64,000 nucleotides of DNA from Magallana gigas (taxonomy: Eukaryota). Shown in pieces: positions 11,718 to 57,649 of the stretch. Within the stretch, counting starts at the first letter, position 1. The number at the start of each line of letters is the position of its first letter. The position numbers and the translations under genes are program-made. The notes below the pieces were generated by a model. The model ran no database searches. It was not told the origin of the DNA and was given only the letters and a program-made list of their open reading frames with translations. The DNA is taken from the NCBI RefSeq assembly GCF_963853765.1, contig NC_088857.1, positions 46,004,001 to 46,068,000 of the forward strand. Reading direction: 5' to 3'.

Positions 11718-11897
11718 TCATATAAGGTAAAAGGGAGGAGACATCTCCTTGTTTGGAAATTGACTAAATTCGATGAACAAGATTGTTTCCATTTCTGGCA
11801 GTGTTCTCAGAGATGACACGGTGTGTGGAGTATATAAGGCTGCCCGGTACCTCTATTCCAGTCAAACCAACAACTGCAAGATTAAAGCAAACCTAAG
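11718..11897 (+). promoter_or_regulatory. Actin A1 core promoter + non-coding exon 1
   Basis: CArG-like TCATATAAGG 11718, CCTTGTTTGG 11747, CCATTTCTGG 11789; TATATAA 11831; Inr-like CCAGTC ~11858; donor AAG|GTAAGA 11897. Confidence 0.75.
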
Positions 11898-12218
11898 GTA
11901 AGAAATCAAATAATATAGCTACATGTATTTAATATGAGTCTTAATTCCTTTACTGTATTCGTATTTTTTTTAAATCCGGCTGTGCAAAAGTTTATCTGTT
12001 GAGCCACAAATAGTTTTTCAAATTTCAAAATCATTTTATTTTTTTAATTGATTTATTCACTTATTTATCTAATGGGTTGTATCAACATGCAATTTTTTTT
12101 TTGCACTGCAACCGAGACATTTTTTTGTCCGACTTTCCCTTTTAAAAGCTTTGATGTAATTTAATACTATATATATGCCTTCTTTTTAGAATATAACACA
12201 CCAAACCAAACAATAACC

Positions 12219-14185
12219 ATGCCTATTAACCTGGTTGAGGACGACATTGCCTGTGTTGTGATTGACAATGGGTCGGGCATGTGTAAGGCGGGCTTTGCCG
12301 GAGATGACGCCCCGCGGGCCGTGTTTCCCGCCGTCACCGGACGACCTAGATACGACGTAAGAAGGCTGTTTGAAACAAATTATGGATGCACACTTCAAAT
12401 ATTTATTTCATTATTGTTTTTTGTTTAATTACATTCTAAATGAAATAAACAGGATTACTATTTTAAAAAATCAATTATTTAAGTATCATGTTCAGAATAA
12501 CCAAATTACTTTAAGCAATTCTAAAATGATATTTATGTATTCTTTAACAACGTTGAACAAGGATATTATTTTTATTGATCATAGATTGTAATGGCGGGAA
12601 TGGGAAGCAAGGATTGTTACATTGGAGACGAGGCCCAGAGCCACCGGGGAGTCCTGTCCCTGAATTACCCAGTAGAACATGGCGTCGTCAATAACTGGGA
12701 CGACATGGAGAAGATCTGGCACCACACGTTCTACAACGAACTAAGGGTGGCTCCCGAGGACCACCCAGTGCTGCTGACAGAGGCACCACTCAATCCCAAA
12801 TACAACAGGGAACAAATGACGCAGGTGAACAATTTTTTTATTATTTTTTTTTTTTACTAAAGACGAATATTTGGTTTTGTTGTGGTTTCTTTATTGATAT
12901 TTCTTCCATATGTTATTTACTTCCAACTCTAATATTTACAGTATTTGAGATTATGCTAGAAACTTGCTAAATTTTCATTTCAAAAATGAAATATGTTAAA
13001 GTGTAGCAATAGAATATATTGACTTCAGTGCTTTTACGCTAACTTCAATTTATTTCAACGTACAGATCATGTTCGAGACGTTCAACGTGCCCGGGTTCTA
13101 CGTCAGCATCCAAGCTGTCCTCTCTCTGTACGGCGCCGGAAGAACGACAGGAATCGTGTTCGATTCGGGAGACGGCGTGTCTCACATCGTCCCCATATAC
13201 GAAGGTAAATTGAAAGCAGCATTGTTCTTATATTAAAACTTAAATATAGCTGACATCTCGAATTAATTGCGAAATACAACTCATATAATGAGTACATTGT
13301 GAATGAATTTTGTTCAGGTTACGCTCTTCCACACGCTATTAAGAGAGTGGACCTAGCAGGCAGAGATCTGACCAAGTATCTACAAAGAATTCTTCATGAA
13401 CGAGGATACAATTTTGTCAACTCTTGTAAGTATTTCTGCATAGTTTTGAAAATATTTATCAATAATCTATTGAAAATTTCTATTCAACAACTTTACTATT
13501 TCAGCCGAACAAGAAATCGTCCGTGACATCAAAGAAAACCTCTGTTACGTTGCTATGGATTTTGAACAAGAACTCTGTGCCTCTGCACAATCCTCCGCAC
13601 TGGAAAAATCTTATGAACTTCCGGACGGTCAAGTGATCACCATTGGCAACGAGCGTTTCCGATGTCCGGAAGTGCTGTTCCAGCCATCCTTTACAGGTAC
13701 GTGGCCAGGTCTTTTATAGATATTGAGCTTTTTGCTTTAATATAGCATATTTTCGATTATAGGTAACCAAAACAATAGAAGATTTTATGCTCAGTTGTTT
13801 TTTTACATGAAATATAAGTGACAGTAATAAAAAAGAATTAAGTATGGTTTCTCTTACAGGTCTAGAAGCGAGTGGAATACACGAACAGATCCACAACTCC
13901 ATCATGGCGTGCGACATTGACATCAGAAGAGACATGTACAGTAACATCGTGCTGTCAGGGGGCTCCACCATGTTTCCGGGGATCAAGGACAGACTAGCCA
14001 AGGAGGTCACGGCCGTTTCCCCCAGTTCAATGAAGGTCAAGATCAGCGCCGCGCCAGAGCGGAAATACTCAGTGTGGATCGGTGGATCTATTCTAGGTTC
14101 TCTGTCCACTTTCCAACAGATGTGGATCACCAAACAGGAGTACGACGAATGTGGACCAGGAATAGTGCACAGGAAATGCTTTTGA
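12219..14185 (+). CDS. ACT: Divergent actin A1 (380 aa)
   Basis: Exons 12219-12356, 12585-12824, 13066-13204, 13318-13425, 13505-13696, 13860-14185 = 1143 nt, all GT-AG. Motifs [41 protein letters not shown]-terminal HRKCF. Confidence 0.97.
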
Positions 14186-54882: not shown

Positions 54883-55062
54883 TCATATAAGGTAAAAGGG
54901 AGGGGACATCTCCTTGTTTGGAAATTGACTAAGTTCGATGAACAAGATTGTTTCCATTTCTGGCAGTGTTCTCAGAGATGACACGGTGGGTAGAGTATAT
55001 AAGGCTGCCTGGTACATTTATGCCAGTCAAACCAACAACTGCAAGGCTAAAGCGAACCTAAG
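54883..55062 (+). promoter_or_regulatory. Actin A7 core promoter + non-coding exon 1
   Basis: Three CArG-like boxes, TATATAA 54996, donor 55062. Confidence 0.75.
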
Positions 55063-55665
55063 GTAAGAAATGATTTTGAAATAATTTTAAAAAAAATAAA
55101 GAAGTACATGTATTAAAACCAACGTCGCCAACATTTAATTTTTACAGCATGTGCTATTTTTTTTTCCTGAGAAACTTGCATTAATCTTATTCTTTTGGAC
55201 CAATTAAAATCGCAGCAATGTTTAACATGCACTCTTGTAGGTTTCCATTCGATTTTCTAAATAAACTCACGCACGTAGCATATAGTTTTTGAAACTAGTG
55301 GTGGGGAAGAGGGACATATTTATCGCTAACCTTGACGAGCATACAAATTTAAAAAAAATAAATTTAAAAATTCGCGATTTTTCAAAATCATTAACTGTGG
55401 GGGAGGGAATGTTAGGGGAGTACATTAAACTTCGATTTTAAGGAAAATATTTATAATTTTACTATTTTCCTTTAAATGCTCCTAAAAAGTGTGTGTGTGG
55501 GGGGGGGGGGGGGGGGGGCTCGTGTTTGTTATGTGTAAAAGTGGGTGAAGGTTTGCGGTGAAGGCAGCCCCCTCCCTTATATTTCCTTGCTTCAAATGTT
55601 CTCAATACTCTCAATGTTTCATTACCTTTCAGAAAAAAATTCGGTAACCAAACCAAACAATAACC

Positions 55666-57649
55666 ATGCCTATTAACTTGGTTGAGGACGACATTGCCTG
55701 TGTTGTGATTGACAATGGGTCGGGCATGTGTAAGGCGGGCTTTGCCGGAGATGACGCCCCGCGGGCCGTGTTTCCCGCCGTCACCGGACGACCCAGATAC
55801 GACGTAAGACAGCTGATTACTTGACAAGTTAACTTGATTTATTCTTTTCTAAAGAAAACATTCCTATGAGTTCTAGATGCGTACAAATAAAAGTATGTCG
55901 ATTGATAAAATACATGGAAAAGTGCACATGTACATTTTATATTAAACGTAATTTTCATTTATAGATTGTAATGGCGGGAATGGGAAGCAAGGATTGCTAC
56001 ATTGGAGACGAGGCCCAGAGCCACCGGGGAGTTCTCTCCCTGAATTACCCAGTAGAACATGGCGTCGTCAATAACTGGGACGACATGGAGAAGATCTGGC
56101 ACCACACGTTCTACAACGAACTAAGGGTGGCTCCCGAGGACCACCCAGTGCTGCTGACTGAGGCACCACTCAATCCCAAATACAACAGGGAACAAATGAC
56201 GCAGGTGAACATTTTTTATTTATTTTTTACAAAAGACAAATATCTGGTGTCGGTATGTTCACTTTATTGATATTTCTTCCAAATGTTATTTACTTCCAAA
56301 TCTAACATTTAGCAGTATTTGAGATTATGCTAGAAACGTATATTGCCAAACATTGCTAAATTTTGATTTCAAAAATGAAATGCTTGCTTTCAAATGTTAA
56401 AGTGTAGTAGTAGTAGAATATCTTGACTTTAGTGCCTTTACGCTAACTTCAATATATTTCAACGTACAGATCATGTTTGAGACGTTCAACGTTCCCGGGT
56501 TCTACGTCAGCATCCAAGCCGTCCTCTCTCTGTACGGCGCCGGAAAAACAACAGGAATCGTGTTCGATTCGGGAGACGGCGTGTCTCACATCGTCCCTAT
56601 ATACGAAGGTAAATCGAAAACAGCATTGTTCCTATATTAAAACTTTAATATAGTTGACATCTCGAATTAATTGTGAAATACAACGTATATAATGAGTACA
56701 TTGTGAATGAATTGATATTTTGTTCAGGCTACGCTCTTCCACACGCTATTAAGAGAGTGGACCTAGCAGGCAGAGATCTGACCAAGTATCTACAAAGGAT
56801 TCTTCATGAACGAGGATACAATTTTGTCAACTCTTGTAAGTTTTTCTGCATAGTTTTGAAAATATTTATCAATAATCTATTGAAAATTTCTATTGAACAA
56901 TTCTAACTGAAATACAAAATTAATGTCTTAATGTATCGATCGTTTTATATTTTTCCAGCTGAGCAAGAAATCGTCCGTGACATTAAAGAAAACCTATGTT
57001 ACGTTGCTATGGATTTTGAACAAGAACTCTGTGCCTCTGCGCAATCCTCCGCACTGGAAAAATCTTACGAACTTCCGGACGGTCAAGTGATCACCATTGG
57101 CAACGAGCGTTTCCGGTGTCCGGAAGTGCTGTTCCAGCCATCCTTTACAGGTAGGTGGCCAGATTCTAGATCTTTTATAAAGAGTGAGCTTTTTGTATTA
57201 ATATAGCATATTTTCGATTATAGGAAACCAAAACAATAGAAGATTTTATGCTCAATGGTTTTTTTTTTTACATGAAATATAGGTGACAGTTATAAAAAAA
57301 ATTAAGTATGGTTTCTCTTACAGGTCTAGAAGCGAGTGGAATACACGAACAGATCCACAACTCCATCATGGCGTGCGACATTGACATCAGAAGAGACATG
57401 TACAGTAACATCGTGCTGTCAGGGGGCTCCACCATGTTTCCGGGGATCAAGGACAGACTAGCCAAGGAGGTCACGGCCGTCTCTCCCAGTTCAATGAAGG
57501 TCAAGATCAGCGCCGCGCCAGAGCGGAAATACTCAGTGTGGATCGGTGGATCTATTCTAGGTTCTCTGTCCACTTTCCAACAGATGTGGATCACCAAACA
57601 GGAGTACGACGAATGTGGACCAGGAATAGTGCACAGGAAATGCTTTTGA
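55666..57649 (+). CDS. ACT: Divergent actin A7 (380 aa)
   Basis: Exons 55666-55803, 55965-56204, 56470-56608, 56728-56835, 56959-57150, 57324-57649; frame intact. Confidence 0.97.

What the first reader, a model, noticed from the sequence alone, without database searches (positions are those of the whole stretch)
11718..57649. Seven-copy tandem array of an intact, strongly divergent actin
All seven genes keep open frames, GT-AG sites, TATA and a non-coding exon 1. By manual count against human beta-actin recalled from memory, A1 differs at ~84 of 375 positions (~78% identity; recompute). Conventional animal actins are normally far more conserved. Nucleotide-binding and catalytic residues (D11, G13-G15, H73, Q137, D154, D157, H161) are retained. 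Inference: an amplified, specialised actin isoform under dosage selection rather than decayed copies.
Basis: partly seen in the sequence, partly recalled or inferred. Interest (0 to 1): 0.75.

Follow-up and report, generated by a model that had tools for sequence, protein, structure and literature searches.

The report
Oyster tandem array of divergent actins
Seven intact, transcribed, almost identical copies of an unusual actin gene lie head to tail on a Pacific oyster chromosome. They are already in the databases as 'actin-1', belong to an old mollusc-wide branch of divergent actins, and are kept alike by gene conversion and purifying selection, so this is a well-formed example of known kinds of thing rather than a new one.

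Summary
Seven + strand actin genes (A1-A7, 11.8-57.6 kb) each have a conserved TATA promoter block, a predicted non-coding exon 1, six coding exons with GT-AG introns and an open 380-aa frame (382 aa in A2). A1 differs from macaque cytoplasmic actin at 84 of 375 positions (77.6% identity), and all nucleotide-binding and catalytic residues are kept.

The window is Magallana (Crassostrea) gigas GCA_963853765.1, chromosome OY970749.1, about 46.00-46.07 Mb. The proteins are already known: UniProt K1RB50 'Actin-1' equals A1, and RefSeq actin-1-like equals A5. RefSeq also carries chimeric 539-aa and 799-aa models that fuse neighbouring copies.

Orthologues exist in Ostrea (94%) and Saccostrea (91%). 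The oyster genes nest in a mollusc-wide clade of 377-380-aa divergent actins, separate from conventional actins of the same species.

Among the copies dN/dS is 0-0.14. Exons are 97-99% identical, while introns are mosaic and often unalignable (45-70%). This indicates old paralogues homogenised by interlocus gene conversion, plus a 26-kb segmental duplication.

Spliced transcript contigs from three public runs show expression. Tissue and function remain unknown. Interest is moderate to low.

The parts
11831..14185 (+). A1 gene, TATA box to stop. TATATAAG at 11831; predicted non-coding exon 1 ends at 11897. CDS exons: 12219-12356, 12585-12824, 13066-13204, 13318-13425, 13505-13696, 13860-14185. 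Product 380 aa.
   Evidence: The protein is identical to UniProt K1RB50.
17274..19935 (+). A2 gene. Exon 1 ends at 17340. CDS exons: 17915-18052, 18301-18546, 18788-18926, 19049-19156, 19248-19439, 19610-19935. Product 382 aa, with a 6-nt in-frame insertion (His-Val) in coding exon 3.
   Evidence: It forms the second half of the RefSeq 799-aa fusion model.
24875..27539 (+). A3 gene. CDS exons: 25523-25660, 25871-26110, 26385-26523, 26646-26753, 26850-27041, 27214-27539. Product 380 aa. AATAAA signals at 27990 and 28002.
37828..40167 (+). A4 gene, the duplicate of A1 in the second 26-kb unit. CDS exons: 38193-38330, 38560-38799, 39041-39179, 39299-39406, 39486-39677, 39842-40167. Product 380 aa.
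43234..45878 (+). A5 gene, the duplicate of A2. CDS exons: 43893-44030, 44279-44518, 44732-44870, 44993-45100, 45192-45383, 45553-45878. Product 380 aa.
   Evidence: It equals RefSeq XP_065941934.1 actin-1-like by position and by sequence.
49633..52302 (+). A6 gene. CDS exons: 50280-50417, 50635-50874, 51149-51287, 51410-51517, 51614-51805, 51977-52302. Product 380 aa.
   Evidence: The protein equals UniProt A0A8W8NDD5. It is the N-terminal part of the RefSeq 539-aa chimeric model.
54996..58130 (+). A7 gene with its 3' UTR. CDS exons: 55666-55803, 55965-56204, 56470-56608, 56728-56835, 56959-57150, 57324-57649. The protein is identical to A6. The 3' UTR runs to the AATAAA signals at 58100 and 58112.
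   Evidence: Transcript contig L003 covers 57318-58107.
11361..37400 (.). First 26,040-bp segmental-duplication unit: A1, A2, A3 and the 3' part of a minus-strand Ras/Rab-type GTPase gene.
37401..64000 (.). Second unit: A4, A5, A6, an extra 5.3-kb copy (A7) and the GTPase gene again. It is 97-98% identical to unit 1 and runs off the end of the window. The junction is at 37400/37401.

Best explanation
This is the Pacific oyster's local array of a real, expressed, divergent actin paralogue, annotated as actin-1 / actin-1-like (UniProt K1RB50).

Each copy is an independent transcription unit. It has a conserved TATA promoter block with CArG-like elements, a short predicted non-coding exon 1, and five coding introns.

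The protein keeps the whole ATP-binding and hydrolysis machinery and the key filament-contact residues: Met44 and Met47 of the D-loop, Tyr143 and Tyr169 of the target cleft, and the C-terminal Cys-Phe. I therefore infer that it is a filament-forming actin and not an Arp. Its partner-binding surfaces are changed. The N-terminus starts Met-Pro-Ile-Asn and is extended by 5 residues, instead of the processed acidic end. There are several D-loop substitutions. 14 of 37 positions in subdomain 2 differ. The 187-206 helix and the hydrophobic plug (L267T, M269L) are altered. I infer filaments with their own dynamics and binding partners.

The lineage is old. It nests in a mollusc-wide clade of 377-380-aa actins that is separate from the conventional actins of the same species.

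The array consists of old paralogues whose introns have diverged to saturation and have been shuffled. Their exons are kept 97-99% identical by interlocus gene conversion together with strong purifying selection. A later 26-kb segmental duplication and a 5.3-kb duplication raised the count from about three to seven. High copy number with one shared promoter and one protein most likely serves dosage.

Shown here: anatomy, intactness, selection, mosaicism, phylogeny, transcription. Inferred: polymerisation, altered partner binding, dosage, tissue.
For: - Gene models and splice sites.
- Pfam Actin matches on five exon translations.
- Exon 7 matches solved actins at E about 1e-53.
- 77.6% identity to vertebrate cytoplasmic actin, with all catalytic and nucleotide-binding residues retained.
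- dN/dS 0-0.14, and A6 = A7 in protein with 24 synonymous differences.
- Exons are 97.1-99.0% identical. Introns of non-sister copies are 45-70% identical, and their groupings differ from intron to intron. For example, A2 and A5 are 96-99% identical in introns 2, 4, 5 and 6 but only 59% in intron 3, where A2 matches A1/A4 at 96-98%.
- Synonymous sites are free to change in this lineage. dS is 1.3-1.6 against the relatives L001/L002, versus 0.01-0.14 inside the array.
- The window is 100% identical to the M. gigas assembly.
- Identical proteins exist in independent annotations (K1RB50, A0A8W8NDD5, XP_065941934.1).
- Orthologues in Ostrea (94%) and Saccostrea (91%).
- Tree: oyster clade 100/100, inside a mollusc clade 96/95. 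The clade stays separate when conventional actins from Mytilus, Haliotis, Mya, Aplysia, Biomphalaria and C. gigas are added.
- The AU test rejects 'A lineage + conventional oyster actins' as one clade, p = 0.0005.
- Shared derived residues.
- Spliced transcript contigs L004 (full 380-aa ORF, all five coding introns removed at the predicted sites), L003 and L006 come from three runs.
- Six RNA runs from three studies hold 12-25% of the sampled words of 37300-43299, about the exon share, some in runs of only 29-109 million letters.
Against:
- The transcript contigs are mosaics of several copies, so I cannot say which copies are transcribed.
- A2 carries a 2-aa insertion and two charge changes and may be impaired.
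- Polymerisation and altered partner binding are inferred from residues only.
- The low dS among copies could owe something to codon-usage selection (GC3 0.59 against intron GC 0.25) rather than to conversion alone.
- The tissue is unknown. One contig probably comes from a gonad library, but that rests on accession adjacency only.
Confidence: 0.8

Rival explanations
1. Part of the array is an assembly artefact. The two 26-kb units would be the two haplotypes of a three- or four-gene array, wrongly laid in tandem, so the true count is lower than seven.
For: The units are 97-98% identical with many small indels. From my own knowledge, that is in the range of allelic divergence in oysters. I could not lay reads across the junction at 37401. 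Metagenome scans for the junction and for a control sequence were both empty, so they say nothing.
Against: The window contains no N. The junction is a clean breakpoint inside a GTPase gene. The units differ in structure: unit 2 has an extra 5.3-kb copy, and intron 3 of A2 and A5 belongs to different types. Even if this rival is true, three or four intact divergent copies with the same properties remain.
Confidence: 0.1
2. The copies are simply recent duplicates, alike because they are young. No gene conversion or special constraint is needed.
For: dS among copies is low at 0.03-0.11. The pairs A1/A4, A2/A5 and A3/A6 really are recent duplicates.
Against: Between the three basic types, introns are 45-70% identical, which is essentially unalignable, while the exons they flank are 94-100% identical. 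The groupings change from intron to intron. Synonymous sites do saturate against relatives outside the array. A post-duplication replacement of intron 3 in A2 or A5 is visible.
Confidence: 0.08
3. The exons stay alike mainly because of selection on synonymous sites (codon usage in a highly expressed gene, or mRNA structure), not because of gene conversion.
For: GC3 is 0.59 and CDS GC is 0.51 in a locus whose introns are 25% GC. Small RNA runs still assemble the transcript, which suggests high expression.
Against: Synonymous sites are saturated (dS 1.3-1.6) between this array and related genes with the same fold and similar composition. Mosaic introns show that sequence has moved between copies. 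GC-rich third positions are also what biased gene conversion would produce.
Confidence: 0.1
4. The protein is an actin-related protein, or a non-polymerising actin-like protein with a non-filament role, rather than a true actin.
For: It shows 23% divergence, a non-acidic extended N-terminus, and changes in the D-loop and the hydrophobic plug.
Against: It is 77-79% identical to actins, whereas an Arp1 falls outside all actins in the tree. All catalytic and nucleotide-binding residues, Met44/Met47, Tyr143, Tyr169 and Cys374-Phe375 are kept. The best solved-structure matches are F-actins over the full length of exon 7.
Confidence: 0.05

Closest known systems
UniProt K1RB50 'Actin-1' and RefSeq actin-1 / actin-1-like of Magallana gigas (XP_065941934.1, XP_034321796.2, XP_065941325.1)
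   Same: These are the same genes. K1RB50 is identical to A1, XP_065941934.1 to A5, and A0A8W8NDD5 to A6/A7. The window is 100% identical to GCA_963853765.1 OY970749.1.
   Different: The public annotation does not show seven clean genes. XP_034321796.2 (539 aa) joins A6 residues 1-293 to A7 residues 134-380 through a junction with no GT-AG. XP_065941325.1 (799 aa) reads from A1 through A2's translated promoter and exon 1 into A2. I found no paper on these genes.
Clustered actin genes of the snail Biomphalaria glabrata (PMC5440852)
   Same: That paper reports ten molluscan actin genes clustered on seven scaffolds and attributes them to tandem duplication. Paralogues there are more alike within a genome than between species, and the paper discusses homogenising constraint.
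   Different: Those are described as conventional, cytoplasmic-like actins. Here the array consists of one divergent paralogue at 77.6% identity to vertebrate actin, with seven copies in 46 kb and direct evidence of mosaic introns.
Caenorhabditis elegans act-1/act-2/act-3 cluster (Krause et al. 1989, as cited in PMC3966223)
   Same: Tandem actin paralogues proposed to evolve in concert by gene conversion.
   Different: The nematode genes encode conventional actin, and conversion was proposed to extend into introns. In the oyster array most introns have escaped homogenisation.
Mollusc-wide 377-380-aa divergent actins, named by automatic annotation 'actin CyI-like', 'actin-87E-like', 'actin-5-like' and similar (Mytilus, Mactra, unionids, scallops, Solemya, Haliotis, Patella, Lottia, Littorina, Batillaria, Babylonia)
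   Same: They fall in the same clade (96/95; SH-aLRT 92). They share S33A, non-glycine at 42, M132F, K191R, a hydrophobic residue at 278, and a 2-5-residue N-terminal extension. Fused 534-539-aa models in Haliotis, scallops and Ruditapes suggest adjacent copies there too.
   Different: The oyster branch is further accelerated, with a stem of 0.26 changes per site. Its N-terminus is Met-Pro-Ile-Asn instead of Met-Ser/Thr-x-Tyr/Phe followed by acidic residues. A1 is only 78-82% identical to the other members.
Mammalian testis actin-like proteins (ACTL7A/B, ACTRT1-3), from my own knowledge
   Same: They are divergent, tissue-restricted members of the actin family that sit beside conventional actins.
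   Different: They are much more divergent from actin, are single-copy, and are not known as tandem arrays. No orthology is implied and none was tested here.

Membership tests
Actin family (Pfam PF00022) | The sequence matches the Actin profile above the curated cut-off. | tested here: met
   Exon translations 2, 4, 6 and 7 score 45-158 bits against a cut-off of 27. Exon 5 (35 aa) scores 17.8 bits on its own.
Actin family (Pfam PF00022) | Phosphate-binding loops and the catalytic and nucleotide-contact residues are present (D11, G13-G15, K18, Q137, D154, G156-G158, H161, K213, E214, G302, K336). | tested here: met
   All are retained in A1. T303S and Y306F are conservative.
True (filament-forming) actin, as opposed to Arps | The protein groups with actins and not with Arps, and the filament-contact residues are kept. 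| tested here: met
   An Arp1 sequence lies outside all actins in the tree. M44, M47, Y143, Y169, F266, C374 and F375 are kept; L267T and M269L differ.
True (filament-forming) actin, as opposed to Arps | The protein polymerises into F-actin. | not testable with these tools
   This needs purified or expressed protein.
Conventional metazoan cytoplasmic/muscle actin | Very high conservation. Conventional actins from Saccostrea, Babylonia and a fluke are about 89-95% identical to vertebrate actin here, and all share one state at the 58 columns tested. | tested here: not met
   A1 is 77.6% identical to the vertebrate actin. At the 58 columns where four conventional animal actins agree and A1 differs, A1's state is by construction not the conventional one.
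Conventional metazoan cytoplasmic/muscle actin | A short acidic N-terminus directly after the initiator Met (or Met-Cys). | tested here: not met
   A1 starts Met-Pro-Ile-Asn-Leu-Val before the acidic residues, and is 5 residues longer.
Mollusc-wide divergent actin clade (377-380 aa) | Monophyly with those sequences, apart from conventional actins of the same species. | tested here: met
   Support is 96/95 in the careful tree and 92 in the wider quick tree. The AU test rejects a clade with conventional oyster actins, p = 0.0005; note that this group was named after the tree had been seen.
Mollusc-wide divergent actin clade (377-380 aa) | Shared derived residues. | tested here: met
   S33A, G42 to Ile/Val/Ala (Cys in Solemya), M132F, K191R, T278 to a hydrophobic residue and V287I are shared by all 14 members tabulated.
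Tandem array under concerted evolution | Coding sequence is homogenised relative to non-coding sequence, and sequence blocks are exchanged between copies in a mosaic pattern. | tested here: met
   Exons are 97-99% identical against introns at 45-70% between types. Intron groupings are incongruent. dS is 0.01-0.14 inside the array against 1.3-1.6 outside.
Tandem array under concerted evolution | Paralogues are older than the species that carry them, that is, orthologous copies or intron types occur in sister species. | not tested
   I had only proteins of Ostrea and Saccostrea. Within each species their copies cluster together. That fits concerted evolution, but it also fits independent amplification.

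The most novel reading that the evidence does not exclude
The oyster array may be the local expansion of an ancient and functionally unstudied second class of true actin. The class would be defined by 377-380 aa; an N-terminal extension of Met-Ser/Thr-x-Tyr/Phe followed by acidic residues; S33A; non-glycine at 42; M132F; K191R; and a hydrophobic residue at 278.

In my trees this class takes in molluscs, a brachiopod, echinoderms and a hemichordate, beside their conventional actins. None of the fluke or vertebrate sequences in the tree belongs to it, and no ecdysozoan was sampled. If real, bilaterians ancestrally had two actin classes. The second would have its own partners and role, for example in gametes or larvae of broadcast spawners, and a tendency to sit in tandem arrays.
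Probability: 0.25. Interest if true: 0.6.

Novelty: new member of a known kind. Interest (0 to 1): 0.33.

Why it matters
- It gives a clean seven-gene annotation for a locus where RefSeq carries fused 539-aa and 799-aa models.
- It shows that the oyster 'actin-1' genes are not ordinary actins. They belong to a conserved, divergent and so far uncharacterised molluscan actin clade. This matters to anyone using 'actin' as a reference gene or as a marker in bivalves.
- It offers a compact natural example of exon-limited homogenisation: saturated, shuffled introns around nearly identical exons.
- It does not reveal a new kind of genetic system.

Tried and rejected
I therefore have no depth, strand, junction or copy-specific data. 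The Pfam, PDB and protein searches used exons 2, 4, 5, 6 and 7, or P0268:294-539. Later look-ups of full-length oyster actins were made by database protein id only.

2. The spliced 380-aa protein has no reference, so I did not type it. Full-length work was done in scripts, or through database ids found by other routes.

3. The representative library (clustered at 50%) gave nothing closer than 78%, because actins collapse at that level.

4. A first profile on a conventional-actin backbone was misaligned by MAFFT. In a local test a conventional-actin backbone ranked conventional actins above the query. A fungal actin-family protein annotated 'Actin-1' worked as backbone instead.

5. Scans of metagenome contigs for the duplication junction and for a control sequence were both empty, so they are uninformative.

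6. Literature searches by accession (K1RB50, XP numbers, SRR/ERR numbers) and by topic found no paper on these genes.

7. I first assumed an intron at codon 150. Recounting puts it in codon 168.

8. I considered pseudogene decay, an Arp identity and a recent origin from conventional oyster actin. I rejected all three.

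
Full report
**What is there**

Repeat finding shows seven direct copies spaced 5.3-12.6 kb apart. Reading A1 base by base and projecting its exons onto the window gave seven gene models, A1-A7, all on the + strand.

Each model has six coding exons. All 35 coding introns are GT...AG, and every frame is open to a single stop. The products are 380 aa, except A2 at 382 aa, which carries a 6-nt in-frame insertion in coding exon 3.

In conventional actin numbering, the coding introns lie at 41/42 and 121/122 (phase 0) and within codons 168, 204 and 268 (phase 1).

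Upstream of each gene is a block of about 215 nt that is 90% identical on average across the seven copies. It holds TATATAAG, two CArG-like elements (for example CCTTGTTTGG), and, 66 nt after the TATA box, a conserved GAG|GTAAGA donor. It is inferred from conservation, because no transcript available to me reaches it.

**How divergent it is**

- Five exon translations match Pfam Actin.
- Exon 7 matches solved actins over its full length at E about 1e-53.
- In a script, full-length A1 is 291/375 = 77.6% identical (84 differences) to a macaque cytoplasmic actin.
- Conventional Saccostrea actins are 89-91.5% identical to the same protein, and the Babylonia actin is 94.7%.
- All phosphate-loop, catalytic and nucleotide-contact residues are kept. 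So are H73, M44, M47, Y143, Y169 and the C-terminal Cys-Phe.
- The differences concentrate in particular regions, counted from the list: subdomain 2 (14 of 37 positions), the 187-206 helix, positions 227-235, the plug (L267T, M269L) and subdomain 3.
- The N-terminus is Met-Pro-Ile-Asn-Leu-Val before the acidic residues.

**Where it comes from and whether it is known**

A profile made of exon translations on a fungal actin-family backbone, followed by a search with part of a hit, brought in full-length relatives. Cluster and contig look-ups then showed the following:

- The window is 100% identical to Magallana gigas GCA_963853765.1, chromosome OY970749.1. Window base 1 is about 46,004,001.
- UniProt K1RB50 'Actin-1' equals A1.
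- RefSeq XP_065941934.1 'actin-1-like' equals A5.
- UniProt A0A8W8NDD5 equals A6/A7.

So the proteins have been public since the first oyster genome. I found no paper about them.

The RefSeq models for this array are partly chimeric:

- A 539-aa 'actin-1' joins A6 residues 1-293, through one new Thr codon, to A7 residues 134-380. The junction has no GT or AG.
- A 799-aa 'uncharacterized protein' runs from A1 through A2's translated promoter and exon 1 into A2.

**Phylogeny**

Orthologues in Ostrea edulis (94%) and Saccostrea (91%) form a 100/100 clade with the seven copies. That clade nests in a 96/95 clade of 377-380-aa actins from bivalves and gastropods, apart from conventional actins.

Adding conventional actins of Mytilus, Haliotis, Mya, Dreissena, Aplysia, Biomphalaria, C. 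gigas and a sea cucumber leaves the divergent clade intact, with SH-aLRT 92.

An AU test rejects a clade of the oyster lineage with conventional oyster actins (p = 0.0005). The group was named after the tree had been seen.

All 14 clade members I tabulated share these states: S33A, non-Gly at 42, M132F, K191R, a hydrophobic residue at 278, V287I, and a short N-terminal extension.

A brachiopod, echinoderm and hemichordate set of divergent actins joins this clade with weaker support (85/94). These sequences share some of the same states. Long-branch attraction and my similarity-based sampling are not excluded.

**How the array evolves**

Pairwise dS is 0.03-0.11 and dN is 0-0.008, giving dN/dS of 0-0.14. 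A6 and A7 encode the same protein with 24 synonymous differences.

Segment by segment, exons are 94-100% identical in every pair. Introns are near-identical only in the recent pairs (A1/A4, A2/A5, A3/A6). Otherwise they are 45-70% identical, which is unalignable in sequence that is 75% A+T.

The intron groupings are incongruent:

- A2 has A1-type intron 3 (96%) but unrelated introns 2, 4 and 5.
- A2 and A5 are 96-99% alike in introns 2, 4, 5 and 6 but 59% alike in intron 3.
- A7 is A1-like in introns 3-5 and A3-like in intron 6 and downstream.

Synonymous sites are not frozen in this lineage. Exon 7 has dS of 1.3-1.6 against two related genes from environmental assemblies (L001, L002), compared with 0.01-0.14 inside the array.

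The simplest reading is old paralogues whose exons are homogenised by interlocus gene conversion under purifying selection. Concerted evolution by gene conversion has been proposed for clustered actin genes of C. elegans. A 26,040-bp tandem duplication (11361-37400 repeated from 37401, 97-98% identity) and a 5.3-kb duplication came on top of that. GC3 is 0.59 against intron GC of 0.25. That fits either biased conversion or codon selection.

**Expression**

Three assembled contigs from public runs are spliced copies of these genes:

- L004 (SRR11939894) carries the whole 380-aa frame, with all five coding introns removed exactly at the predicted sites.
- L003 (SRR13374880) joins exons 5-6-7 and runs 458 nt into A7's 3' UTR, ending at the AATAAA signals.
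- L006 (ERR10659112) joins exons 3-7.

SRR13374879, SRR13374888 and SRR13374889 are oyster gonad RNA-seq, and a study of that date deposited 18 gonad libraries. L003 is therefore probably from gonad, but that is an inference from neighbouring accession numbers.

Six RNA runs from three studies hold 12-25% of the sampled words of 37300-43299, which is about the exon share. Some of these runs have only 29-109 million letters, which suggests abundant transcripts.

The contigs are mosaics of copies, so copy-specific expression is unknown.

**What could not be done**

From then on I worked beside coding exon 3 in all search tools.

The 26-kb junction, and hence the count of seven rather than three or four, is therefore not checked against reads. 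The window has no N, and the two units differ in structure. On that basis I give the artefact reading about 0.1.

**Verdict**

The thing itself is an annotated oyster actin paralogue family arranged as a tandem array under concerted evolution. Both are known kinds of thing. The scan's earlier notes on this genome do not report another such actin array.

The most interesting residue is the possibility that these genes belong to an ancient, unstudied second class of true actins.

Noticed in passing
window 50280-57649 (A6-A7) and 12219-19935 (A1-A2); proteins P0266-P0271, P0489: RefSeq models fuse neighbouring copies. A 539-aa 'actin-1' joins A6 residues 1-293, a new Thr codon, and A7 residues 134-380, and the junction has no GT-AG. 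A 799-aa model joins A1, A2's translated promoter and exon 1, and A2. In the three models I read (two of the divergent oyster lineage, one a conventional C. gigas actin) the repeated stretch begins at the same residues, and actins of the same 534-539-aa length are annotated in Haliotis, Mytilus, Mya, Pecten, Dreissena, Ruditapes, Aplysia, Biomphalaria and a chiton. It is probably a propagated annotation or transcript artefact at tandem actin pairs, but the cause was not established.
   Followed up: partly
window 31326-37406 (- strand), repeated from about 57.7 kb to the window end: A Ras/Rab-type GTPase gene with a coiled-coil upstream part. The public gene calls list a 591-aa product with Ras, Arf and Roc Pfam hits. 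The copy in unit 1 is cut at the duplication junction (37401), so it lacks its 5' exons. The copy in unit 2 runs off the window.
   Followed up: partly
window 18301-18546 (A2 coding exon 3): A2 alone has a 6-nt in-frame insertion adding His-Val after the Ile that corresponds to actin residue 54. It also has E-to-K and D-to-N changes in exon 7, so it may be the least fit copy.
   Followed up: partly
L001:533-4204 (ENA assembly ERZ1756085) and L002 (ERZ27296262): Related divergent actin genes of unknown source. Exon 7 is 80-87% identical in protein, with dS of 1.3-1.6. L001 has the same exon boundaries for exons 4-7, and a second gene starting Met-Pro-Ile-Asn lies 2.4 kb after the first gene's stop, so that relative is tandemly arrayed too. 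L002's product ends in a different C-terminus.
   Followed up: partly
L006:1-160 (ERR10659112 transcript contig): This spliced transcript carries about 36 extra nucleotides inside coding exon 3, flanked by a repeated CTAAGGGT. None of the seven window copies has it. It could be an allele, an eighth copy or an assembly slip.
   Followed up: no
window 11400-11500 and 37440-37500: A (GATC)n/(GA)n microsatellite lies about 65 nt inside the start of each 26-kb unit. The GA run is 42 nt longer in unit 1.
   Followed up: no
window 11700-11900 and the six equivalent blocks: The conserved promoter block contains two CArG-like elements (CCTTGTTTGG and CATATAAGG) upstream of the TATA box. These are the kind of site that serum response factor uses in actin promoters. 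I recognised them from memory and did not test them.
   Followed up: no
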